NCBI RefSeq assembly: GCF_006345805.1
Contig: NW_021835660.1
Coordinates: 1 to 26,076 of the forward strand
Direction: 5' to 3'
Length of the DNA: 26,076 bases
From: Octopus sinensis
Lineage: Eukaryota
Positions 1-26,076 of this stretch are shown piece after piece. Position 1 is the first letter of the stretch. The number at the start of each line of letters is the position of its first letter. The notes below the pieces were generated by a model. It ran no database searches. It saw nothing but the letters and a program-made list of their open reading frames with translations, and had not been told where the DNA came from. A program made the position numbers and the translations under genes.

Positions 1-512
1 TGCATAACTTGTGATCGTGGCTCTCTGCGTGGCTGAGGGCATGTCTGAGAGGGCCATTATGAACAGTAGTGTTCCCAGAACAGTGCCCTGCGGAACACTG
101 CTCACTATTTGCGTGTTAATGGAAGTGACCCCATTGGCTACTACCACCTGAATTCTATCTTTCAGAAAGTCATGAAGCCATTCTCCCAGTTTTCCAACTA
201 TGTTGAGATCACGCAGTTTGTGACATATCATTCCATGATCGACTTTATTAAAGGCCTTTGCAAAGTCGAGATATATCACTTCCACATTTGAGTGGTTGAG
301 CAGCCGTTTCAGCACCCAGTCATAGTGTTATAGGAGCTGAGTTAAACAGCTTCTCCCTGGTCGGAAACCATGTTGGGAGTCGGGCAGCAAGTCATTTTCT
401 TCAAGGAAGGTGATCAGCTTCCTTCTGACTATTCGTTCCATGACCTTGCTGATGTGTGAGGTCAGAGAGATAGGTCTATAGTTCTTGGCTTCCGCTCTGC
501 TACCTCCTTTGA
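1..512 (-). mobile_element. CR1/L2-type LINE reverse transcriptase fragment, 5'-truncated, runs off the window start
   Basis: Manual minus-strand translation: KGGSRAEAKNYRPISLTSHISKVMERIV...QHGFRPGRSCLTQLL*...VIYLDFAKAFNKVDH...SSVPQGTVLGTLLF...TSYA. These are the NYRPISL, QHGFR, LDFxKAFD and PQG RT motifs. One in-frame stop at 328-330. Confidence 0.9.
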
Positions 513-739
513 TCTACTATTTGGACATTCGTTGTGTTAAATGTGCTATAATTCGAAGTAATCTTATTTTCGTTTTGTGAAATTTAGTGATGTATATAAA
601 AACTTGCTATACTGGCCTGAATCCTATGAAGCTTGGCTGTCGGATGAAGTAAAGCCAAGTGATTGATCTAGAGACAACAAAAACTGAATTCATGTTACGG
701 GTTTATTTTTTAGTTGTTTTTAAACATTTTACTTAACAG

Positions 740-1678: not shown

Positions 1679-1875
1679 GCGCGGCCGCAAGTTGGTAAGA
1701 AGCGCTACACTCTGGTCACTGCTGAGAAATCCGTCAGGGGGTAGAAAATATTTTATGTGTACATATGTGCGTTTGATCGCGCGGCCGTCAGTTCGTAAAC
1801 AGCCCTACACAATGGTCACTGCTGTAAGATCCGTCGGGCGGCAGAAAAATATTTTATGTGTGCGTGTGTTCGTCT
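1679..1875. repeat. Diverged two-copy direct repeat with a 100-bp period
   Basis: gcgcggccg starts at 1679 and 1779. Both units share ctacac, tggtcactgctg, atccgtc and agaaaa(a)tattttatgtgt. Confidence 0.85.
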
Positions 1876-2061
1876 AATCATGCCTTGTCAAAGAAGCCCC
1901 CCGTCGTCAAAACATATAATACACCTAATATTCTTTAAATAGTCAGAACTTTAGTCTCGGTCACAAAGAACATCTAAGCACCCCGTGCTCTCACCCACCG
2001 GAATGACCGCTGCCTGACCCGTTAAAATCTTCAACGCACCCACCACCCGTTTTCAACATAC

Positions 2062-3599: not shown

Positions 3600-4691
3600 T
3601 TCTATATACATACACATACACACACATGTGTGTTTGAGATAGAGAGAGAAGAGAGAGAGAAAATTGCGGGGTGTTTTTTTTAGCAAAATGCCAGCGTCTT
3701 TCAGGACAAAATCTTTGGAAGCTGTTCGCATGCTTTACTGCCTCAGACTCCCACTCCGTTTGTTGTTTTACTTTTCTTTCCTCAAGCGTGACCGACAGGC
3801 CACACACATTGCGTTTTATTACATATAATGTTGTTGTTGATGCAGTAGTAGTAGTAGGAAGAGGAGGAGGAGGAGGGGAGGCGGAGGAGGAGTTGCAGCA
3901 ACATTATAAGCAATAAATAAAAGGATGAGGGAATGGAATTTTTTACAAGAAGCAATAGATAATAGTTTATTAAACAAAACTAATAAACAAAATCGAGAAA
4001 GAGGGCATAACAGTGTTATAGATGATATGTGTGTGAAACGGTAGAGCCACTGCCTCCCACACGTACATATGGCCCTGTCTGTATAGAGGAAGGAAGGAGA
4101 CACAAAGAAATGGAAGGTGTTGGAGAAAAATAGATGATTAATATGAAAATGACGCTTAGCTAAATTCACAATCGTTCTTTTTTGTTTTTAATTACAAGAT
4201 TACAGACTGGAGACGCACTTCTTAAAGTTACTCTCTCTATTATAATTACACATTTTTTAAACATTTAAATAAATTGTTGTGCAGTTGTTTCTCGTATGCG
4301 AAGTTTTGTTTTATGTGTAATGAATTTATGAAAACGTCAGAGAGATTTAAGAGATTTAAGTAGCTGGTTAAACTCTCCTATCGTCTCTTATATATATATA
4401 TATATATATTATGAATGTTGTGTGTGTGTGTGTGTGTGTGGTGTGTGTGTGTGTGGGTGTGTGGAGAGAGAGAGAGAAGAGTGTGGTGTGTGTGTGTTTG
4501 TTAGATGTGATGTACAGAATTGAATATTTAGAAAAAGTTGTCAGAATTTTGGAAAAAAAATCCTATCTCTTTATTATTATTAGCGCTTTCGTTCCTCTCT
4601 AGTACTTATAAAAAAAAAACAGATTTTGGGGGTTTTGTTTAGAAGAGTACGTTGTTTCTGTTTTTTAGGGGTGAGGTTCCAAGTCAGTGGA

Positions 4692-4708
4692 GATGGATAG
4701 ATAGAAAT

Positions 4709-4746
<38 letters not shown>

Positions 4747-4775
4747 GGGCAGATAGATAGACAGACATACAGATG
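4692..4775. repeat. (GATA)n microsatellite expanded in the left arm only
   Basis: The paralogous right arm (~7355-7395) has only a short interrupted version. Confidence 0.9.
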
Positions 4776-4885
4776 GGTAGAGAGAAAGAGAGAGAAGGGA
4801 TATCCACATTCCTATTCACCATTCATTCATTTATTTTTTCCTTTACCATTGTATTGGAATGGGTTTAATGCTAGTGACCACTTTA

Positions 4886-6153
4886 GATTTCTTTATTGGC
4901 CACGCAAGGCTAAACATAGAAGGGACAAAATACAAAGTAGAGTTTTTCTTTTCGGGAAGAAGAGATGGAGGAAAGGGGGGGGCGAATTCCGATCAAAGGG
5001 GATCGTGAAAAATAGTGGGGCCGATCAATAGGGATCATGTATCACAAAAATGTCAATGTAAAAAGGGAAAACAAATTAGGTTTGTCCGTGGATGGAAAAG
5101 TCTACGGAAAAGACCACGGGAACCTTGGGCAATAGTGTCATGCAAAAAGAAAACACATTACAGTAAGTGGGTCTCTTTTTTCCTTTCGTTTTTTTCTTTT
5201 GGTTCATAGGATTATGCTCAAGCTGGTTCCGTCATTCACACGTGCCATCCTTGATACATTCACCCATCTTTTTTTGAAGCATTCACTAGACAAAACTTTC
5301 TTCTCTACTCTCACTTTCGTCTTGAAGTGATACTTGAAGAAGTTGATGAGAGATTGACTAGCGAGGAAAGTTTTTGTTTCTAGACCTTTCAGACGCATCC
5401 ACCATACACATTCTTTCGTCATAGCCACAAGTACGATGAAAATGGCTCTTACTTCCCGTTTCAAGGAAGGCGGCGCGACAATATTCACGATAGACTCGGT
5501 TGATAAACCGACTCGTCCTACACGTGGCAGCAGTCGTTCGACATAGGCCTAGAGGTCGGAAATGGTTGGACACTGCACGAGTGCATGCAGGACGGTTTCG
5601 TCGTTCTGACCGCATCTCGGAGTGATCAGCCCCGTGTTTCTCGAGCCATGCCTGTAGAGCTTATCCCGAACGAGTAGTGCTTCTCGATAGCACTGCCAAG
5701 CCAGGGATCTCTGGAAGTTGTCCATAGGTCCCGGCCCGAAATTCGTCTTGAACAGGCGGGTCAGGTATTCCTCGTCGACGCCCAGGTTCGCCCTGACATC
5801 GTCGTCGTACCTCCCCTCCACTAATCCTCTATAGAATGCTTTGGTTGTGTTAAAGTCGCTCAAGGTCGACCCGGGACGGCATAGTTGCTCGAGAGCAACG
5901 GGACACTCGCGGTGCCATTCGCCCTTCCTCGGCCTCTTCTTGATCCACGACTGCAGCTAGGTCATGGTGACGAGCTGCGGGAAAGCGCTCCGCACAAACG
6001 GCGACCACACCTGTTCACCGTCGTCTACGTAGAGCTGGAGATGTCGCAGTCTCAGCGCGTGTCTGTGCATCATCAACCACGGCATGCCCAATCCTCCTTT
6101 TAACGGGTGTTGACAGCAAATGGATCGCCTGACCATCGGAACGCATCCTTTGG
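4886..6153 (-). mobile_element. 5'-truncated L1/Tx1-clade LINE: ORF2 C-terminus with CCHC-type zinc-finger region plus 3' UTR; 8-bp TSD CCACTTTA
   Basis: Reading KGCVPMVRRSICCQHPLKGGLGMPWL...SLAWQCYREAL...PRCGQNDETVLHALVQCPTI...KRWVNVSRMARVNDGTSLSIIL* (stop at 5204-5206), with internal stops and a frameshift. AATAAA lies near the 3' end. CCACTTTA occurs at 4878-4885 and 6154-6161. Confidence 0.9.
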
Positions 6154-6724: not shown

Positions 6725-7745
6725 ATGCCTAAAGCTAGAACATTCCAATGCTACGCATATATATATCTGAACATTTGTAGAGATGAGCCACATTCGGAAT
6801 AGCGAATTCAAATTCTCCACTTTACCTTCAAACATTCAATTTTAGGGAGGATTCCTTGATGAGGTGTGTGGTTGGGAATACGTCCATGTTTATACTGTGT
6901 AACTGTGACCAATTCCATGGTTTTGCGTTAGAGAACATTAGTATAACACTTACAAAAGGTACTGACTCAGCTTTTCTTTCAAACATTAACTTTGGAGAGA
7001 ACTTTTTGATGAATTGTAGTTCCATTGCTTTTCGGTATTGCGGATTGTATGTTCATGCAGAACCACACTTTATCAAAAAAAAATTACCTCCAAAAATGAA
7101 TGTTTGGAAGGAGTATATACTAAACATAACTCAAAGAGGAGGAAAAAGAAGAAAAAAAGGAGAGAAAGGGAAAAAGGAAAAATGTGATAGAAAAAAAGCA
7201 AAAAAGTCTTTCAGTGATGACCAAACCACGCCTGTTTTTTTTTTTTAAGTGGTCACCATCTTTAAACTAGTTCCAATACAATGGTAAAGGAAAAAGTAAA
7301 TGAATGAATGAGGAATAGGAAGGTGGATACCCCTTCTCTCTCTTTCCCTCTGCCCATCAGCCTATCAACCTACCTATATTTCTATCTATCCATCTCCATT
7401 GTCTTGGAACTTCACCCCGAAACAAAAAGAAATTATGTTTTCTTCCAGCCCCCCCCCCCCAAAGCATGTTTTATATAAATGAAGAAGCTGTTTGTACATT
7501 CACAAGATTGTATTTGACGAGTTCTAGAGAGGAACGAAAACGCTAATAATAAGGAAGAAATAAAAGGATTTTTTCCAAAATTTTGACGACTTTTTTTCTC
7601 AATATATATAGATAGATAGATAGATGTAAACACCTATGCCACACCAAGGACCAACCCCAGAGCTGGGTCTACTGTTTGAATTGGATTTGGTACTTGGATA
7701 TTACAGTATCCTAAAAACACTTGATATCTTCAATGTTGTTCACCT

Positions 7746-7898
7746 CTGTGTGAGCCCTAAATTATCGTACCTGTGTGAGCCCTAAATTATCGTACCTGTG
7801 TGAGCCCTAAATTATCGTACCTGTGTGAGCCCTAAATTATCGTACCTGTGTGAGCCCTAAATTATCGTACCTGTGTGAGCCCTAAATTATCGCACCTG
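7746..7898. repeat. Minisatellite, 6 x 25 bp (ctgtgtgagccctaaattatcgtac)
   Basis: Units start at 7746, 7771, 7796, 7821, 7846 and 7871. They are identical except for one T>C in the last unit, with no spacers. Confidence 0.97.
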
Positions 7899-8011
7899 AC
7901 CGTTTCTGGCCTCCCACATGTTGATATGCCCCTATTCCAATGAAGCTCTCTAACTAAATTACATTATAATGCGTGTGCGTGTGTGTGTGTGTGTGTGTGC
8001 GTGTGTGTGTG

Positions 8012-9892: not shown

Positions 9893-10055
<163 letters not shown>

Positions 10056-10091
10056 TATAATAAGAAAAAAAGCAACAAGAATGGATCAATA

Positions 10092-10180
10092 TTTCGGTAC
10101 AATTGTTTCGTACGAAGACAGCTTTATTAAGGCTGCAAATATTGCAGTAAATATAAGTGACCCGTACTCATCAGCCGAAA
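10092..10180 (-). ncRNA. Type I hammerhead ribozyme with 48-nt stem II insert
   Basis: Exact reverse complement of the 10984-11072 motif. All core nucleotides are intact. Confidence 0.85.
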
Positions 10181-10983
10181 AAACATCTGAGTTCTCCAAA
10201 CATCTAAGGGGGTAATGTTACACTCCTGAAACATCAGGGATAGTTCTATAAAAATAAGATTTAGGTAACAAACGGACTTCTAAAAGTTCTTTTAGTGTTG
10301 CACAGTCATATAACGGGTTTTTAAAAAGTATTTTAAAAAACCTCTTGGTTTCCCAGAAAATGAAAATGTAAATCCATCCATATTGAAGTAAGTTAGATTT
10401 CTGGAGATATGGGGAGATGTATCATACTCACAGAAGATGCATTTATCCATAATTAGTCCATAATAAAGTGTGTTTCCTGATGTGTGATGATATACTGGTT
10501 ACATTTCTGAGAATTTCTCCAAACTGCTATGTTAGAATTAAATTTGTTGCAGGAGACTTAGTGAAGCGTAGAGACAATCCCTCACATAGGGTATATTGGG
10601 GTAACTGAGAGGGGAGGGGGATGTAAATGTCCAACTACGCAGAATAGTTTATTTCAGTGGAGACGAACTGACTGATTCAGAATTTGCAAGAATCTAAGAG
10701 CTTTAAGGAGGAATGCTAATCTTGACCAAATACCGTCGTTAATTGCTATATAAAGAGGATATGGGAAGGTAAAGAAGGGTCAAAGGTTGTCACTATAGGA
10801 AAAAAACATTAACAGATTTCAGTGCAATACTAGAAAGGAGGTCATTTAATTTATTTCTTTGTGCAACACTAAAAGAACTTTTAGAAGTCCGTTTGTTACC
10901 TAAATCTTATTTTTATAGAACTATCCCTGATGTTTCAGGAGTGTAAAATCACCCCCTTAGATGTTTGGAGAACTCAGATGTTT

Positions 10984-11072
10984 TTTCGGCTGATGAGTAC
11001 GGGTCACTTATATTTACTGCAATATTTGCAGCCTTAATAAAGCTGTCTTCGTACGAAACAATTGTACCGAAA
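10984..11072 (+). ncRNA. Type I hammerhead ribozyme with 48-nt stem II insert
   Basis: Stem I UUUCGG (10984-10989) / CCGAAA (11067-11072). Core CUGAUGA (10990-10996). Stem II GUACG (10997-11001) / CGUAC (11050-11054). GAA (11055-11057). Palindrome ACAAUUGU (11058-11065). Predicted cleavage after A11066 (GUA). Confidence 0.85.
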
Positions 11073-11578
11073 TATTGATCCATTCTTGTTGCTTTTTTCT
11101 TATTTATAATCACCCCGCATTATCTTATGGTTAACGCCATATAGATTTCTGGTGCATCTAAGTTAAGTACCGCATTCATGTGAATTCAACAGAACTCACT
11201 TGAATCTTAATTGCTTTTACTGTATATATGTATGTATATATATATGTATGTATAACTATATATGCATATGTATATAATATATTCATACAGGTATATGCAT
11301 ACATAGTACATTACATACATCCATGCATACGCGCGCATACATATATATATACATGCACGTCTGCACACACGATATTACTAGTACTACTACTCCCAGCACC
11401 ACAAGGACATTGAAAACAATCAAAAATGCGATCATTCTGGGTATTCAGCAATTTTTCTTCATGTCTTTTTTTATGATTGCATCCTCAGCATTTAGTTACA
11501 TATATACAGTACACAGACATACAGACACACACACATATACATACTTACATACATGTGTGGTATGTGTATATATATATA

Positions 11579-12358: not shown

Positions 12359-12606
12359 TCAACACATCACTATGATGCTCTCCCACTACTTCTGCTCGTG
12401 ATCAGAGATGCACATAACGTCAGCCATTAAGGGACATGCTCAACTGGTTATGGTCAAACAACTGACAGGCAAATCTGTGGTATTGAGCAGAATATTTGCT
12501 GTAGCCCATCTTTTATACCAAGACAAAACATGTACATGGTAACACTTCCAATGAGTTAAGATCAGAAGCCATGAGAACCAGTGTCTGGTATTGCATCAGG
12601 GCATTT
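12359..12606 (-). mobile_element. Partial copy of the (TAA)n-bounded non-coding retroelement family (also at 18774-19155 and 19165-19655)
   Basis: High identity to 18915-19150. Abuts (ATT)n at 12605-12647. Confidence 0.85.
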
Positions 12607-12648: not shown

Positions 12649-12835
12649 GCTGGCAGAATTATGAGAGCGTTGGAAAAACTGTTTTATGTTACTTGTTCTA
12701 GTTCTTTACATTCCGAGTTCAAATTCCGTTAATGCCATCTTTACCTTTCATCCTTTCGGAGGTCTATAAAATAAAGTACATGCCATGTACTGGGGTCAAT
12801 ATCATTAAATTTTTCCCTCCCCTCAAAATTGCCGA
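12647..12835 (+). mobile_element. Diverged SINE (ggcggcgagctggcagaatcg family)
   Basis: ctggcagaat...gagttcaaattcc...cctttcatcctttcgg...aagtac, similar to 18212-18610 and 21430-21535. Confidence 0.7.
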
Positions 12836-16007: not shown

Positions 16008-16150
16008 CGGTGAGTTGGCTGAGTTGCGAGTGACGAAAATGTTGCCTTAGTGGTATTTGTTTTGGCTCTTCATTTCCCGAGTTCAAATCCCGATGAGATC
16101 AACTATGTCTTTCATCCTTTCCACTGTGATAAAGTACAATAAACTACCAA
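16008..16150 (+). mobile_element. Diverged SINE (ggcggcgagctgg family)
   Basis: ggtgagttggc...gagttcaaatcccg...tctttcatcctttc...aagtac. Confidence 0.65.
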
Positions 16151-17669: not shown

Positions 17670-17771
17670 GTATGTATGTATGTATGTATGAATATTCACA
17701 GTAAATCATCAGTTAACGAAATTACTGTTTCATATTTTCTTAGGCTTAGCTCGTAGAAACTTCATCATACT

Positions 17772-17797
17772 TCTCTCTCTCTATCTCTCTCTATCTC

Positions 17798-17879
<82 letters not shown>

Positions 17880-18211: not shown

Positions 18212-18615
18212 GGCGGCGAGCTTGCTGAGTCGTTAGAGCATCTGTAAAAATGAATTGCAATATTTGCTTCAGCTCTTTACGTTCTGAGTTCAACTCACGC
18301 CAACGTCAGTTTGCTTTTCATTCTTCCAGAGACAATAAAGTAACAGTGATGTACCTAGATCGTTGAGGTCGACTTTCTTTTACCCTTCAAAATTGCTGGC
18401 CTCAAGGCTGCAAGATGAGAGAATCGTTAGCACACCTGGAAAAATGAGAGAATCGTTAGCACACCTGGAAAAATGCTTAGCGGCATTTCCTCCATCATTA
18501 CGTTCTCAGTTCATATTCCACCCAGGTCGATTTTGCCTTTCAGCCTTTTGGGTTCGATAAAATAAGTACAAATTCAGCCCATCCCCCCAAATCTCAGGTC
18601 TTCTGCCTTTTGTAG
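18212..18615 (+). mobile_element. Two tandem SINEs; the second has an exact 29-bp internal duplication
   Basis: ggcggcgagcttgctgagtcgttag head at 18212. atgagagaatcgttagcacacctggaaaa occurs at 18415-18443 and 18444-18472. Confidence 0.8.
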
Positions 18616-18773: not shown

Positions 18774-19655
18774 GAGTGAGAGAGCAGTGCATGCCACTAA
18801 AGTAACACTGGGGCACAAATATACGAAGCCCAGTATAAGGGTTGTTTAAGAATGTTGAACGAAGCACCCATGTTTCCAGAGGTGAATTATTCAAACCCCA
18901 AAGAATCCCTCTCAACACATGGCTATGATGCTCTCTCCATATTTCTGCTCGTGGTCAGAGATGCACATATCGTCAGCCATCGAGGGACATGCTCAACTAG
19001 TTAAGATCAAACAACTAACAAGTAAATCTGTGGCATTGAGCAGAATATTTGATGTAGCTCTTCTTTTATACCATACAAAACATGTACATGAATACACTTC
19101 CAATCAGTTAATATAAGAAGCCATGAGAGTTAGTGCCTGGTACTGCATCTGGGTAATTATTATTGAGTAACAGAGTACTGCATGCCATCAAAGTGACATT
19201 GAGGAATAAATATACGAGGCCCAATATACACATCATGACTACCCATCTGATAAGGGTATATCAGGCACATGCATCACAACCATATATGCATGACATGGTG
19301 ATCTCATATCAAGATAAACAGCGCAAGGCCTTGTAGGTGGTGACCCAGTTAGAATTTACTTCAGGCTGAGTAGCCCAACCTGCTCGAAAGGTTCCTGAAT
19401 AAGGGTTGTTTAAGGATGTTGAACTAAACACCCATGTTTCCAGAGGTGAATTATTCAGACCCTAAAGGCTATGATGCTCCCCTATCCATGGTTATGATGC
19501 TCCTCTACTACATATGCACATATCGGTAGCCAAGAGATATGCTCGACTGGTTAAGGTCAAACACCTGGCAAGCAAATCTGTGGTATTGAGCAGAATATTT
19601 GCTGTAGCCCATCTTTTATACCAAGGCAAAACGATGTACATGATAACATTTCCAA
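18774..19655 (-). mobile_element. Two head-to-tail copies of a non-coding retroelement, each ending in (TAA)n
   Basis: Copy 1 (18774-19155) has an internal deletion at ~18835. A short ttattatt linker lies at 19156-19164. Copy 2 spans 19165-19655. Both start gagt(g/a)a(g/c)agag...catgcca on the plus strand. Confidence 0.85.
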
Positions 19656-21789: not shown

Positions 21790-22026
21790 CTCACTCCTAT
21801 AACTTCATAAGGATATTTACACTCTCTAAGATATTTGGAAAACCTATATGTGATTTAGCTGATGAATACTTGACATTATATTTGCTGTAATATTTGCAGC
21901 TTGAAATAAAATGTTAATAGTATGAAACAATTGTACTAATCTACTGATCCATTCTTGTTGCTTTTTTCTTGGTTATAATCACCCCACATAATTTTATGGT
22001 TAATACCATAAAGAATTCTGGTGCAT
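21790..22026 (+). mobile_element. Solo, diverged PLE pseudo-LTR related to 10860-11158
   Basis: Aligns by eye with 10930-11158 (tgatccattcttgttgcttttttctt, ataatcacccc, ttctggtgca). Ends in (TA)n. Confidence 0.8.
21852..21941 (+). ncRNA. Type I hammerhead ribozyme with 48-nt stem II insert, covarying copy
   Basis: Stem I UUAG/CUAA. Core CUGAUGA (21859-21865). Stem II AUACU (21866-21870) / AGUAU (21919-21923). GAA. Palindrome ACAAUUGU (21927-21934). GUA triplet. Confidence 0.82.
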
Positions 22027-22165
22027 ATAATATATATATATATATATTATATAATACAAACATGCCATAAAACGTCGTTTTATGTTCATTCTAACTTGTA
22101 AAGGCTTATATTTTTTTATTAATTGACATTTTTATGTTTCAAGTTATATATGTGACTGTTTAATT

Positions 22166-23150
22166 ATGCCATGTACAAAAGAAGCCTTGGCACTCTCTGA
22201 ATTTCAGAAAGGCTGCATTGTGAGTCATTCTGAAGGTGACATAAAATCGCAGAAAACCTTGGGATCCCGATTTCTACAGTTAATAGAGTGATTGTGAAAT
22301 TCACCAGAGTGGGGAAAGAGTCCACATCACCGCGTCCAGATAAACCAGGGCCCGCTGACAGGACCCTTCTCTTTAAGAGAAGTGTAGAGGATAATCCTCA
22401 TTGCAAGGCCTCTGACAGAGCAGAACAAATTGATGTCAGTCTCAGAACAGCTGTTCGGTATCTCCATAAACTTGATTACTATGGGAGAGCAGCAAGAAGA
22501 AAGCCACTTCTTCGACCAGCCAACATCAAGCGGAGAAAGGATTTGGCCAGTGAGATGGTGGAGAGTCCACAAGCATTTTGGAACACTGTCATATTCTCTG
22601 ACGATTCCAGGTTTGCTGCTTTTCCTGAGAGTAGTCGAGCGTGGGTCTGGATACTGAGATCAAAATTTGATGCGAAAAGATTGCAGCCAACAATCCGTGA
22701 TGGCCTGGGAAGCAATTTGGAGAGATGGTTGATCAGAGCTGGTGGAGTGTGATGGAAACATAAACTCAGACACATATGAGTCCATATTGCAGAAAGGACT
22801 CCTTTCAAACTTCTCCACTGGTGAAATGATTAATGAAAATTCTTTAAATATTGAAGAGGGAGCTTTTTGTCACACGGCTAGAACAACCCTAGATTTGTTG
22901 TATGAAAATAGCATTAAAAATCTTCCTTGGCCAAGCCAGTCACCAGATATGAACCCTATTAAGCTCCTCTGAGACATAACGGACAGGAGACTTCATAAAA
23001 GGAACAAGAAAGCACCTTCAAAGCCAAATCTTTTGAGATTACTGCATGAAACTTGGCAAGAAATTCCGCAAGAGAACATTCGTCATCTGTCAATAACATG
23101 CCAATAAGATCCTTGCATTGAAAAATACAAAGGGCATGTCTACTAAATAA
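22166..23150 (+). pseudogene. Tc1-family (DD34E) transposase, frameshifted
   Basis: LSEFQKGCIV / IAENLGIPISTVNRVIVKF...GRAARRKPLL...FWNTVIFSDDSRF...WPSQSPDMNPI...KGMSTK*. A possible right TIR lies at ~23212-23245; no left TIR is recognisable. Confidence 0.9.
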
Positions 23151-25290: not shown

Positions 25291-25496
25291 ATCATATATG
25301 TGTATATATATATATACGCAGAAGAATTTGTATGCAATACACACTATATATTATATATGTGTGTGTTAAGAGAGAGAAAGAGTATGTGTGTGTATTTGTG
25401 TGCTTGTGTGTGTGGGGGGGGGGATTAAATGACAAGGAAACTGCGCGAAAATATCTGAACTTTCCCAAGTGTAAAGGTTTTAATGTCACACAGGAA

Positions 25497-25588
25497 AAGA
25501 GAGAGAGAGAGAGAGACAGTCAGACAGAGAGCTAGATAGACAGACAGACAGAAAGGGAGTGGTTGAGGGAGAGAGAAACAGGCAAAGA

Positions 25589-25642
<54 letters not shown>

Positions 25643-25684
25643 GACTAAGAGAGAGAGAGAAACAAAAAGAGAGGGTAAGAGAGG
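25497..25684. repeat. (GA)n/(GACA)n purine-rich microsatellite
   Basis: Seen directly. Confidence 0.95.
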
Positions 25685-26076
25685 TGAATTTCTGGCATAG
25701 AAGTCTGGAAGTCTGGAATTTCTTTAATTAAAGATCATATTTTGCCAATTCCACATTTTCTTGTCACCACATCTGTCATCGTATAAAGAGTTGTTCTTTG
25801 TAAAATGGATCTCTGTCACTCTCGACGATGACTGTTGTCATATTTTGATCAACGGTTTGGCTTAGTGTCATTGAATTAACGTCTAAAATGGCTGAGAATT
25901 TCACAGGACAAGAGTACTTTTAACATAAATTTTAAGGAGGATCAGAGTAACACAATGCCCCACCCTTTGAATTACAGTAGGATCCCAAAGAGTTTAACTC
26001 TACCTAATAGCACACAGAAAAAATTCGGTTAACTCGAGTCTGTTGTAAAAGATATTTACCCAAAATACCCAAGGTG

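What the first reader, a model, noticed from the sequence alone, without database searches (positions are those of the whole stretch)
10984..11072. Unusual hammerhead: minimal palindromic stem III combined with a 48-nt structured stem II insert
Every core nucleotide is canonical, with a 6-bp stem I, a 5-bp stem II and an 8-nt palindrome ACAAUUGU before the GUA site. This matches the dimer-forming type I architecture known from Penelope-like elements. Those ribozymes usually have a short stem II loop; here it is 48 nt with an internal hairpin (CUGCAA-UAU-UUGCAG). Length-limited motif searches would likely miss it. The insert could supply tertiary contacts or a protein-binding or regulatory module. 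I cannot confirm novelty without a database search.
Basis: partly seen in the sequence, partly recalled or inferred. Interest (0 to 1): 0.88.

Follow-up and report, generated by a model that had tools for sequence, protein, structure and literature searches.

The report
Long-stem-II hammerhead ribozymes in octopus repeats
The flagged sequence is very probably a real self-cleaving hammerhead ribozyme motif with an unusually long second stem, and it is one of four such motifs from two repeat families in this 26-kb Octopus sinensis contig; it is a new-looking variant of a well-known ribozyme that standard database models miss, not a new kind of element.

Summary
Positions 10984-11072 (+) hold a type I hammerhead with a canonical core, a 6-bp stem I and a 5-bp stem II base (plus 2 G-U pairs) that closes a 48-nt hairpin rod. 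Stem III is the palindrome ACAAUUGU, and cleavage is predicted after A11066.

It is not alone:
- An identical copy lies on the minus strand (10180..10092), in the other arm of a 251-nt inverted repeat.
- A copy that is 79% identical lies at 21855-21939. It carries four compensatory pair changes in stems I and II and has an untouched core.
- A motif of an unrelated repeat lies at 2165-2244 with the same design: a 55-nt stem II and the palindrome ACACGUGU.

Simulated windows gave no such motif (0 of 400 and 0 of 3000). Rfam finds none of the four, although it picks up a compact hammerhead in a control locus.

The head-to-head copy pair and the TA-rich microsatellites at the 3' side of the three family-1 copies fit published Penelope-like element (PLE) insertion anatomy. 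However, no PLE gene and no tandem array are present, and no further copies could be retrieved. Cleavage activity and any function of the insert remain untested.

Verdict: real, a new variant of a known kind, of moderate interest.

The parts
10984..11072 (+). HHR-R, the flagged type I hammerhead. Stem I is 10984-89/11067-72, CUGAUGA is 10990-96, stem II base is 10997-11001/11050-54, GAAA is 11055-58, stem III is C11059/G11064 with loop AAUU, then U11065 and A11066. Predicted cleavage is between 11066 and 11067.
11002..11049 (+). 48-nt extension of helix II. Together with the 5-bp base it folds into one imperfect hairpin rod, with the inner hairpin at 11017-11031.
   Evidence: minimum free energy -13.8 kcal/mol, z = -2.4; the same rod forms in copy 3 (z = -3.7)
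11058..11065 (+). ACAAUUGU, the self-complementary helix III segment. In a monomer it gives 2 bp plus a 4-nt loop. Between two ribozymes it gives an 8-bp duplex.
   Evidence: two-strand fold -46.8 kcal/mol against 2 x -19.0; the second family keeps a palindrome, ACACGUGU
10092..10180 (-). HHR-L, a copy of the hammerhead identical in sequence, on the minus strand. A17 is 10098 and predicted cleavage is between 10098 and 10097.
   Evidence: 130.8 bits, the same score as HHR-R
10054..10304 (-). Left arm of the inverted repeat. It is a copy of the repeat unit on the minus strand and corresponds to 10860-11108.
   Evidence: I1: 258 nt, 96% complementary; 251 nt, 98.4%
10860..11220 (+). Right copy of the repeat unit. 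It is shared with the left arm up to 11108 and with copy 3 up to 11161. The true 3' end lies somewhere between 11161 and the microsatellite at 11221.
10305..10859 (.). 555-nt spacer between the arms. It is unique within the window and shows no coding signal. It is either the upstream part of the right copy or unrelated target DNA.
21820..22030 (+). Third, diverged copy of the repeat unit, 79% identical to 10950-11161. It is followed by (TA)n.
   Evidence: (D19)
21855..21939 (+). HHR-3, the hammerhead of the diverged copy. The core is intact, stem I has 4 bp, stem II starts with A-U, and the spacing between CUGAUGA and GAAA is 58 nt. Predicted cleavage is between 21935 and 21936.
   Evidence: 101.9 bits
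2165..2244 (+). HHR-4, a hammerhead of the same design in an unrelated repeat. CUGAAGA is 2168-74. Stem II base GAAAG/CUUUC is 2175-79/2225-29, followed by an A.C mismatch and then 6 bp (CACAAU/AUUGUG). GAAA is 2230-33, the palindrome ACACGUGU is 2233-40 and A17 is 2241. Stem I has only 3 bp.
9947..10053 (.). (AC)n then (TA)n microsatellite, abutting the 3' end of the left (minus-strand) copy.
11221..11282 (.). TA/TATG microsatellite after the right copy.
22029..22052 (.). (TA)n run directly after copy 3.

Best explanation
These are genuine type I hammerhead ribozyme motifs carried by dispersed, non-coding repeats of the Octopus sinensis genome. They most likely sit in terminal fragments of Penelope-like retroelements (PLEs) or of their non-autonomous derivatives.

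Shown here:
- The hammerhead core is canonical in all four motifs.
- Helices I and II are kept by compensatory changes.
- Helix II is a 55-58-nt imperfect hairpin rod in two unrelated families.
- Helix III is a self-complementary 8-mer in all four.
- Two copies form a head-to-head inverted pair.
- The three family-1 copies abut TA-rich microsatellites on their 3' side.

Inferred:
- In an RNA that carries the motif, the core folds between helices I, II and III and cuts after A17 (GUA|), leaving a 2',3'-cyclic phosphate and a 5'-OH.
- Because helix III is only 2 bp plus a tetraloop, efficient cleavage probably needs two sense motifs. These would pair through the palindrome into an 8-bp helix III, as in newt, viroid and PLE hammerheads.
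- The small irregularity that follows the first 5 bp of helix II in all three distinct sequences may stand in for the usual loop 2.
- At this locus the copies look like relics. No second sense copy is nearby. A transcript through both arms would lock the ribozyme into a roughly 250-bp hairpin.
For: Anatomy.

Chance: 0 hits in 400 and in 3000 simulated windows, against 2 and 4 real hits.

Covariation between copies R and 3: 95.7% of cells are paired, against 24-51% when the partners are slid. There are 4 pairs with changes on both sides, 2 in stem I and 2 in stem II.

Conservation profile: all 19 positions of the two core segments are identical, while the stem strands are 33-67% identical and the unit as a whole is 79% identical.

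Second family: it has the same design with different stem sequences, and its palindrome is kept through a central AU-to-CG change.

Helix II folds as one rod in all three distinct sequences, with z = -2.4, -3.7 and -1.9.

The two-strand fold is 8.8 kcal/mol better than two monomers, with an intermolecular helix III.

Locus architecture: inverted repeat and flanking microsatellites.

Literature: PLE insertions are 5'-truncated. They often have an inverted 5'-truncated copy directly adjacent. They prefer (TA)n targets and carry the hammerhead near the 3' end (PMC8557442). Their 3' ends vary because reverse transcription starts at internal sites (PMC11167929). Small palindromic helix III is typical of metazoan and some PLE hammerheads (PMC4209133). 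Cephalopods carry PLEs and Rfam-type hammerheads (PMC6962438).
Against: - No reverse transcriptase or GIY-YIG endonuclease remnant of PLE type lies near any copy or anywhere in the window (Pfam; tblastn with Poseidon_Ac).
- There is no tandem or pLTR arrangement.
- No further family members could be retrieved, so covariation rests on two distinct sequences plus one analogous motif.
- In a 161-nt context a competing fold is 4.7 kcal/mol more stable than the hammerhead fold.
- HHR-3 has A10.1-U11.1 and a 4-bp stem I, and HHR-4 has a 3-bp stem I.
- No recognisable loop-loop tertiary contact is present.
- Published PLE hammerheads cleave poorly in vitro and are dispensable for insertion in vitro.
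- Cleavage was not tested.
Confidence: 0.7

Rival explanations
1. The unit is a short non-autonomous element in its own right, either a solo monomer of a non-LTR retrozyme or a SINE-like repeat of roughly 300-370 nt with a fixed 5' end at TGTGCAACAC. Two independent full-length copies landed 555 nt apart in opposite orientation. In tandem or multimeric copies elsewhere in the genome, the hammerhead would process transcripts into unit-length linear and circular RNAs.
For: Both arms begin at the same unit position, 10860 and 10304. The unit is non-coding. Retrozyme units are 150-400 bp, AT-rich and carry type I hammerheads with a helix III of 2 bp plus a tetraloop (PMC7229834; PMC7761336). Monomers are common, and retrozymes are proposed to be PLE derivatives (bioRxiv 10.64898/2026.07.22.740005).
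Against: There is no tandem array or partial second unit. Self-alignment of the unit is not significant: 85 of 300 shuffles score as high. The 98.4% identity of the arms and their head-to-head layout are what the one-event PLE model predicts. There is no tRNA-like head. The 3' ends differ between copies (11108, 11161 and up to 11220).
Confidence: 0.25
2. The long helix II is a functional module rather than a passive extension. It would be a protein- or ligand-binding or regulatory hairpin that gates folding of the ribozyme, or the carrier of the tertiary contact to helix I. This can hold together with either explanation of the repeat.
For: The rod is kept in three distinct sequences of two families at almost the same length (58, 58 and 55 nt) and with better-than-shuffled stability. 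The inner hairpin is nearly invariant between copies R and 3. All three have 5 regular pairs and then an irregularity.
Against: There is no sequence similarity between the two families' rods. Nothing in Rfam matches the insert. There are no data on binding or activity. A plain long helix can also arise neutrally.
Confidence: 0.15
3. The motifs are decayed or fortuitous hammerhead look-alikes with no catalytic activity. The relevant feature of the locus would then be the 251-nt inverted repeat itself, a foldback or hairpin-RNA source.
For: A transcript through both arms pairs all 89 nt of HHR-R with the left arm. The stems are weak in HHR-3 and HHR-4. Competing folds exist.
Against: Chance expectation is below 0.001 per window. 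The core is perfectly conserved across 21% divergence, with compensatory stem changes. The same design appears in an unrelated repeat that has no inverted partner.
Confidence: 0.07

Closest known systems
Canonical metazoan type I hammerheads of satellite DNA and non-LTR retrozymes (newt, Schistosoma Sm-alpha, coral, mussel, axolotl); Rfam RF00163 Hammerhead_1
   Same: Type I topology. Identical core. 6-bp helix I in HHR-R. Helix III of 2 bp capped by a palindromic tetraloop, which permits a double-hammerhead. AT-rich non-coding repeat context (PMC4209133; PMC7229834).
   Different: Helix II is a 55-58-nt rod here, against 4 bp plus a 6-nt loop in the Rfam consensus (seen). The conserved loop 1/loop 2 nucleotides are absent. 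There is no tandem array in the window. RF00163 does not score any copy.
Hammerheads of Penelope-like elements (min-HHRs and the small-palindromic-helix-III variants of Drosophila, rotifers, shrimps and mosquitos; Cervera & de la Pena 2014). Lunse et al. 2017 is cited from the reference list only, because the paper was not held.
   Same: Dispersed copies. Palindromic positions 15.2-16.2 and loop 3. Expected action as a dimer. Helix II longer than canonical. Locus anatomy, with an inverted adjacent copy and (TA)n flanks, as described for PLE insertions (PMC8557442).
   Different: Published PLE motifs have a helix II of 6-8 bp closed by a short loop. They usually have an unpaired nucleotide between A9 and 10.1 and a helix I of 4-5 bp. 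Here there is no such bulge, helix I has 6 bp in HHR-R, and helix II is 7-8 times longer. No PLE ORF is nearby.
'HHR_half_core' cases in Naiad PLEs (Craig et al. 2021, PMC8557442)
   Same: CUGANGA and GAAA halves lie 35-50 nt apart in 3' UTRs of a PLE clade that targets (TA)n and survives only as remnants in cephalopods.
   Different: The spacing here is 55-58 nt. No Naiad ORF is present.
Discontinuous hammerhead of mammalian Clec2 3' UTRs
   Same: It shows that a hammerhead helix can tolerate a very large insertion (150-1500 nt) and still be a hammerhead (PMC6155905).
   Different: It is type III, the insertion is in helix I, and it is a single-copy gene element rather than a repeat.

Membership tests
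Hammerhead ribozyme (class) | Conserved core: C3 U4 G5 A6 N7 G8 A9, G12 A13 A14, the A15.1-U16.1 pair, and H17 (not G) at the cleavage site | tested here: met
   All four motifs have it: CUGAUGA or CUGAAGA, then GAAA, A...U, and A17.
Hammerhead ribozyme (class) | Three helices around the core, supported by covariation | tested here: met
   There are 23 pairs with 95.7% of cells paired, and 4 compensatory pairs in helices I and II. Slid controls give 24-51%. Only two distinct sequences were compared, plus an analogous second family.
Hammerhead ribozyme (class) | Site-specific self-cleavage that gives a 2',3'-cyclic phosphate and a 5'-OH | not testable with these tools
   This needs in vitro transcription and cleavage assays, or mapping of RNA ends.
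Rfam hammerhead families (RF00163, RF00008, RF02275-7, RF03152) | Score at or above the family gathering threshold | tested here: not met
   There was no hit at gathering score in the whole window and no hammerhead hit at E<=10 around any copy. A control compact hammerhead in L006 scored 21.5 bits, E=0.017. The likely cause is the cost of the long helix II insertion; this is an inference.
Type I hammerhead | Helix I open-ended, helices II and III closed by loops | tested here: met
Canonical metazoan type I hammerhead (definition in PMC4209133) | Helix I of 6 bp and helix III of 1-2 bp with a 2-4 nt palindromic loop | tested here: met
   HHR-R and HHR-L have 6 bp, and a helix III of 2 bp plus AAUU. 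HHR-3 and HHR-4 have shorter helix I (4 and 3 bp).
Canonical metazoan type I hammerhead (definition in PMC4209133) | Helix II of about 4 bp closed by loop 2, which contacts loop 1 | tested here: not met
   Helix II is a 55-58-nt rod, and no canonical loop 2 is present.
PLE min-HHR (PMC4209133) | Helix II of 7-8 bp, an unpaired nucleotide between A9 and 10.1, helix I of 4-5 bp, and no helix III loop | tested here: not met
   There is no bulge after A9, helix II is much longer, and a 4-nt helix III loop is present. A motif of exactly this published type was seen in L010:12975-13014 for comparison.
Penelope-like element insertion | ORF with a PLE-type reverse transcriptase and a GIY-YIG endonuclease | tested here: not met
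   Pfam found only LINE-type RVT_1/zf-RVT and a Tc1 HTH domain elsewhere in the window. The spacer gave nothing. tblastn with Poseidon_Ac gave no hit better than E=1.7 in the window. Short 5'-truncated copies would not be expected to keep the ORF.
Penelope-like element insertion | Partial tandem (pLTR) and/or an inverted 5'-truncated copy directly adjacent; bias for (TA)n targets; variable 3' 'tail' | tested here: inconclusive
   A head-to-head inverted pair is present. TA-rich microsatellites abut all three copies. The 3' ends differ (11108, 11161, up to 11220). There is no direct tandem. It cannot be shown that the 555-nt spacer belongs to the right copy.
Penelope-like element insertion | Sequence similarity of the unit to the pLTR of a full-length PLE of the same genome | not testable with these tools
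   No searchable octopus genome was available. The PLE homolog search returned 4581 hits, and the 120 listed include no cephalopod.
Non-LTR retrozyme | Tandem repeats of 150-400 bp, each with a type I hammerhead | tested here: not met
   There is no tandem copy or partial second unit in the window. Solo monomers are nevertheless a known state of such families.
Non-LTR retrozyme | Expression as unit-length linear and circular RNAs | not testable with these tools
   This needs RNA data.

The most novel reading that the evidence does not exclude
Hammerheads with a 55-58-nt helix II and a palindromic helix III form a distinct, recurrent architectural class in cephalopod (and perhaps other invertebrate) retroelements. 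Rfam models and the usual RNAmotif descriptors do not see this class. It may include the 'missing' ribozymes of PLE lineages reported to lack canonical hammerheads, namely the Naiads, for which core halves 35-50 nt apart were noted but dismissed. If so, surveys undercount hammerheads, and the claim that some PLE clades do without them would need re-testing.
Probability: 0.15. Interest if true: 0.6.

Novelty: new variant of a known kind. Interest (0 to 1): 0.4.

Why it matters
Hammerheads are catalogued mostly with covariance models and descriptors that cap the length of helix II. Here that helix is seven to eight times longer than usual, and two unrelated repeat families in one 26-kb contig share the design. 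That suggests a blind spot rather than a one-off.

If the class is common, three things follow. Counts of ribozymes in animal genomes are too low. The association between Penelope-like elements or retrozymes and hammerheads may be broader than reported. The rod also offers a natural test of how a hammerhead achieves its helix I-helix II docking without a loop 2.

If it is rare, the finding is simply a correctly spotted and slightly odd member of a well-known ribozyme class, sitting in dead repeat copies.

Tried and rejected
1. Rfam at gathering score and in permissive mode gave no hammerhead hit. The only local hits were mir-297/mir-466-like matches in the TG/TA microsatellite, far below threshold.

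2. I tried several routes to more family members.
- Two exact-pattern scans of the metagenome collection and one of the viral contigs gave only four chance matches.
- A protein search with the antisense open frame of the unit, meant to catch spurious ORFs on octopus contigs, gave nothing.
- Exact-product look-ups of three window ORFs gave nothing.
- About 100 kb of O. bimaculoides and other presumably cephalopod loci, fetched through Tc1 transposase relatives, held no copy and no long-helix-II motif.

3. I tried to link the unit to a PLE.
- Pfam on window ORF fragments and on the spacer gave nothing relevant.
- tblastn with the published Poseidon_Ac protein gave nothing. A weak GIY-YIG-like match in L005 is interrupted by stops, and I rejected it.
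- A homolog search with that protein listed no octopus entries among the best 120 of 4581.
- A Tenebrio PLE locus fetched as a yardstick showed no motif with my descriptor.

4. A 9-nt direct repeat (AATCACCCC) on both sides of the ribozyme suggested a partial tandem unit. The self-alignment is not significant, so I rejected this.

5. A tRNA-derived SINE head is ruled out: no tRNA-like sequence was found.

6. A literature search for the exact motif strings returned only unrelated primer matches. The supplement of Craig et al. 2021 with the 'HHR_half_core' sequences, and the Lunse 2017 and Arkhipova 2017 papers, were not held.

7. I considered reading the locus as a DNA copy of an ambisense viroid-like RNA, because each strand encodes one hammerhead. 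I set it aside because the known PLE inverted-insertion anatomy explains the layout more simply, and because neither strand has two same-sense sites that could release a unit.

Full report
**What is there.**
The window is an AT-rich (36% G+C), microsatellite-rich, ORF-poor eukaryotic sequence. A Tc1-like ORF at 22240-22749 is 98% identical to 'uncharacterized protein LOC115231321 [Octopus sinensis]', whose longest contig is 26,076 bp, the length of the window. The window is therefore very likely a whole contig of the Octopus sinensis assembly.

**The flagged motif.**
At 10984-11072 (+) the sequence reads UUUCGG / CUGAUGA / GUACG-[48 nt]-CGUAC / GAAA / C-AAUU-G / U-A / CCGAAA. In hammerhead numbering this gives:
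- C3-A9 and G12-A14 intact;
- G10.1-C11.1 at the base of helix II;
- A15.1-U16.1 and C15.2-G16.2 in helix III, with the loop AAUU;
- A17 as the cleavage nucleotide (11066);
- a 6-bp helix I.

All details in the finding are correct. The only quibble is that the palindrome ACAAUUGU (11058-11065) overlaps the GU of the GUA triplet rather than lying before it.

**Not chance.**
A descriptor scan (helix I >=5 bp, helix II >=4 bp, helix III hairpin, UH) found two hits in the window and none in 400 simulated windows with the same dinucleotide composition. A relaxed descriptor required 30-120 nt between CUGANGA and GAAA, helix II >=5 bp, a perfect 8-nt palindrome starting at A15.1, UH, and helix I >=3 bp. 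It found four hits, against none in 3000 simulations.

- An identical hammerhead lies on the minus strand at 10180..10092.
- It sits in the left arm of an inverted repeat: 10054-10304 against 10860-11108, 251 nt, 98.4% identical, with 555 nt between the arms.
- A third copy of the same repeat unit lies at 21820-22030, 79% identical to 10950-11161. Its hammerhead is at 21855-21939.
- A covariance model built from these three found no other significant copy in the window. It did give a weak hit at 2158-2254.
- On inspection that hit is a fourth hammerhead, in a repeat with no sequence similarity to the first family. It reads UUC / CUGAAGA / GAAAG-[45 nt]-CUUUC / GAAA / C-ACGU-G / U-A / GAA.

**Comparative evidence.**
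Between copy R and copy 3, all 19 positions of the two core segments (CUGAUGA, and GAAA through A17) are identical. The strands of helices I and II are only 33-67% identical. On the hammerhead structure, 95.7% of cells are standard pairs, against 24-51% when partners are slid by 1-3 columns. Four pairs change on both sides: G-C to A-U and C-G to U-A in helix I, and G-C to A-U and G-C to U-A in helix II.

With 79% overall identity, 19 untouched core positions would be expected about 1% of the time under uniform decay. This is my arithmetic. The block just downstream of the ribozyme is also well conserved (92%), so the rate is not uniform.

The second family keeps every architectural feature with different letters. 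Its helix III palindrome is preserved by a central AU-to-CG change (ACAAUUGU versus ACACGUGU). A hairpin loop has no need to be self-complementary, so this argues that the palindrome is selected for pairing between two ribozymes. A two-strand fold places the 8-bp helix III between molecules and is 8.8 kcal/mol better than two monomers.

**The long helix II.**
In all three distinct sequences the 55-58 nt between CUGANGA and GAAA fold into a single imperfect hairpin rod:

| Motif | Minimum free energy (kcal/mol) | z against shuffles |
|---|---|---|
| HHR-R | -13.8 | -2.4 |
| HHR-3 | -15.7 | -3.7 |
| HHR-4 | -12.3 | -1.9 |

Each starts with five regular pairs, followed by an irregularity: two G-U pairs and a bulge in R, a 2-nt bulge in copy 3, and an A.C mismatch in HHR-4. 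The helix then continues. Whether that irregularity replaces the usual loop 2 as the docking point for helix I is an inference only.

Published metazoan type I hammerheads have a 4-bp helix II, and PLE variants have 6-8 bp (PMC4209133). Craig et al. 2021 searched with spacers of 7-17 nt and merely flagged eight 'half-core' cases with the halves 35-50 nt apart (PMC8557442).

No Rfam family reaches threshold anywhere in the window, and no hammerhead model appears even at E<=10 around any of the four motifs. With the same permissive settings, RF00163 picks up a compact hammerhead in control locus L006 (21.5 bits, E=0.017). I found no paper in the held library that describes such a helix II in an animal type I hammerhead. 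Two key papers were not held, so prior description cannot be excluded.

**What carries it.**
The unit is non-coding. It has no tRNA-like head, is not tandemly repeated, and has no reverse transcriptase or GIY-YIG remnant near it. What can be seen:
- two nearly identical copies lie head to head;
- each of the three family-1 copies runs into a TA-rich microsatellite on its 3' side;
- the copies end at different unit positions (11108, 11161, up to 11220);
- the ribozyme lies 40-150 nt from those ends.

This matches the published anatomy of Penelope-like element insertions. They are strongly 5'-truncated. They often have an inverted 5'-truncated copy directly adjacent, which produces inverted repeats. 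They prefer (TA)n targets and carry the hammerhead near the 3' end (PMC8557442). Their 3' ends vary because reverse transcription initiates at internal sites (PMC11167929).

Under that model the right copy would run from 10305 to about 11220, and the left copy would be the adjacent inverted fragment. That removes the need for two insertions truncated at the same point. The alternative is that the unit is a short non-autonomous element with a fixed 5' end (a retrozyme monomer or SINE-like repeat) that inserted twice. The two readings are close relatives, since animal retrozymes are now argued to derive from PLE pLTRs.

I could not decide between them. No octopus genome was searchable, and every route to more copies failed.

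**How it most likely works.**
By inference from the class, the motif cuts after A17 by internal transesterification. Helix III is only 2 bp plus a tetraloop, and the palindrome is conserved. Efficient cleavage therefore probably needs two sense motifs paired through helix III, as shown for newt, viroid and PLE hammerheads.

At this locus that partner is missing. The neighbouring copy is antisense, and a transcript through both arms would pair all 89 nt of HHR-R with the left arm. In a 161-nt context a competing fold is 4.7 kcal/mol more stable than the hammerhead fold. The copies here are best seen as relics of once-active source elements. What hammerheads do for PLEs is itself unresolved: they cleave weakly in vitro and are not needed for insertion in vitro.

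**Verdict.**
The element is a new architectural variant of a known ribozyme class in a known kind of genomic context. It is not a new kind of system. Interest is moderate. The main value is the hint, from two unrelated families in 26 kb, that long-helix-II hammerheads are a systematic blind spot of current searches.

Noticed in passing
L006:4838-4884 (+) (ENA ERZ22157276, contig ctg13698l): A compact 47-nt type I hammerhead: helix I 5 bp, helix II 5 bp with a 3-nt loop, helix III 4 bp, GUC site. It lies in a contig fetched through a Tc1 transposase relative. Rfam Hammerhead_1 gives 21.5 bits, E=0.017, which is below the gathering score of 34.
   Followed up: partly
L010:12975-13014 (+) (ENA ERZ26859072): A motif of the published PLE 'min-HHR' type: an unpaired nucleotide after A9, a 7-bp helix II, AAUU directly after GAA, and a 4-bp helix I. 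It lies in a locus with several RVT_1 genes.
   Followed up: no
window 22240-22969 (+): A Tc1/mariner transposase remnant (HTH_Tnp_Tc3_2). It is annotated in NCBI as 'uncharacterized protein LOC115231321 [Octopus sinensis]' and starts about 200 nt downstream of hammerhead copy 3.
   Followed up: partly
window 1-513 (-) and 5552-5956 (-): LINE-type reverse transcriptase fragments (RVT_1, frameshifted) at the contig start, and a weak zf-RVT match (22.9 bits, below the Pfam cut-off of 27.5). Neither is PLE-type.
   Followed up: partly
window 7721-7920: A tandem array of about six 25-nt units (CTGTGTGAGCCCTAAATTATCGTAC), nearly perfect.
   Followed up: no
window 12359-12520, 18912-19073, 19462-19623; also 12687-12757, 16051-16121, 18479-18549: Two further dispersed repeat families. 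The second contains GAGTTCAAATCCCG-like strings that resemble a tRNA B box, which suggests tRNA-derived SINEs. ARAGORN finds no tRNA in the window.
   Followed up: no
window 1679-1879: A tandem duplication of about 100 nt (79% identical), upstream of HHR-4. HHR-4 lies between TA-rich microsatellites at about 1340-1625 and 2460-2490.
   Followed up: no
window 11073-11161 and 21942-22030: The roughly 90 nt just downstream of the predicted cleavage site are the best-conserved part of the repeat unit outside the core (86-92% identity, including a 27-nt identical block, TGATCCATTCTTGTTGCTTTTTTCTT plus the preceding base). The reason is unknown. It could be the 5' end of the processed RNA or a site recognised for reverse transcription.
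   Followed up: partly
window 4691-4883, 7247-7395, 17770-17879, 25494-25700: Long GATA/GAGA-type microsatellites account for most of the 'inverted repeats' in the repeat scan. The mir-297/mir-466-like Rfam matches at 11233-11354 are TG/TA microsatellite noise far below threshold.
   Followed up: no
protein P0095: A Penelope-like RT protein, 62% identical to the Anolis Poseidon element, is deposited as 'hypothetical protein, partial [Escherichia coli]' on a 2.6-kb contig. This is most likely animal DNA contamination of a bacterial assembly.
   Followed up: no
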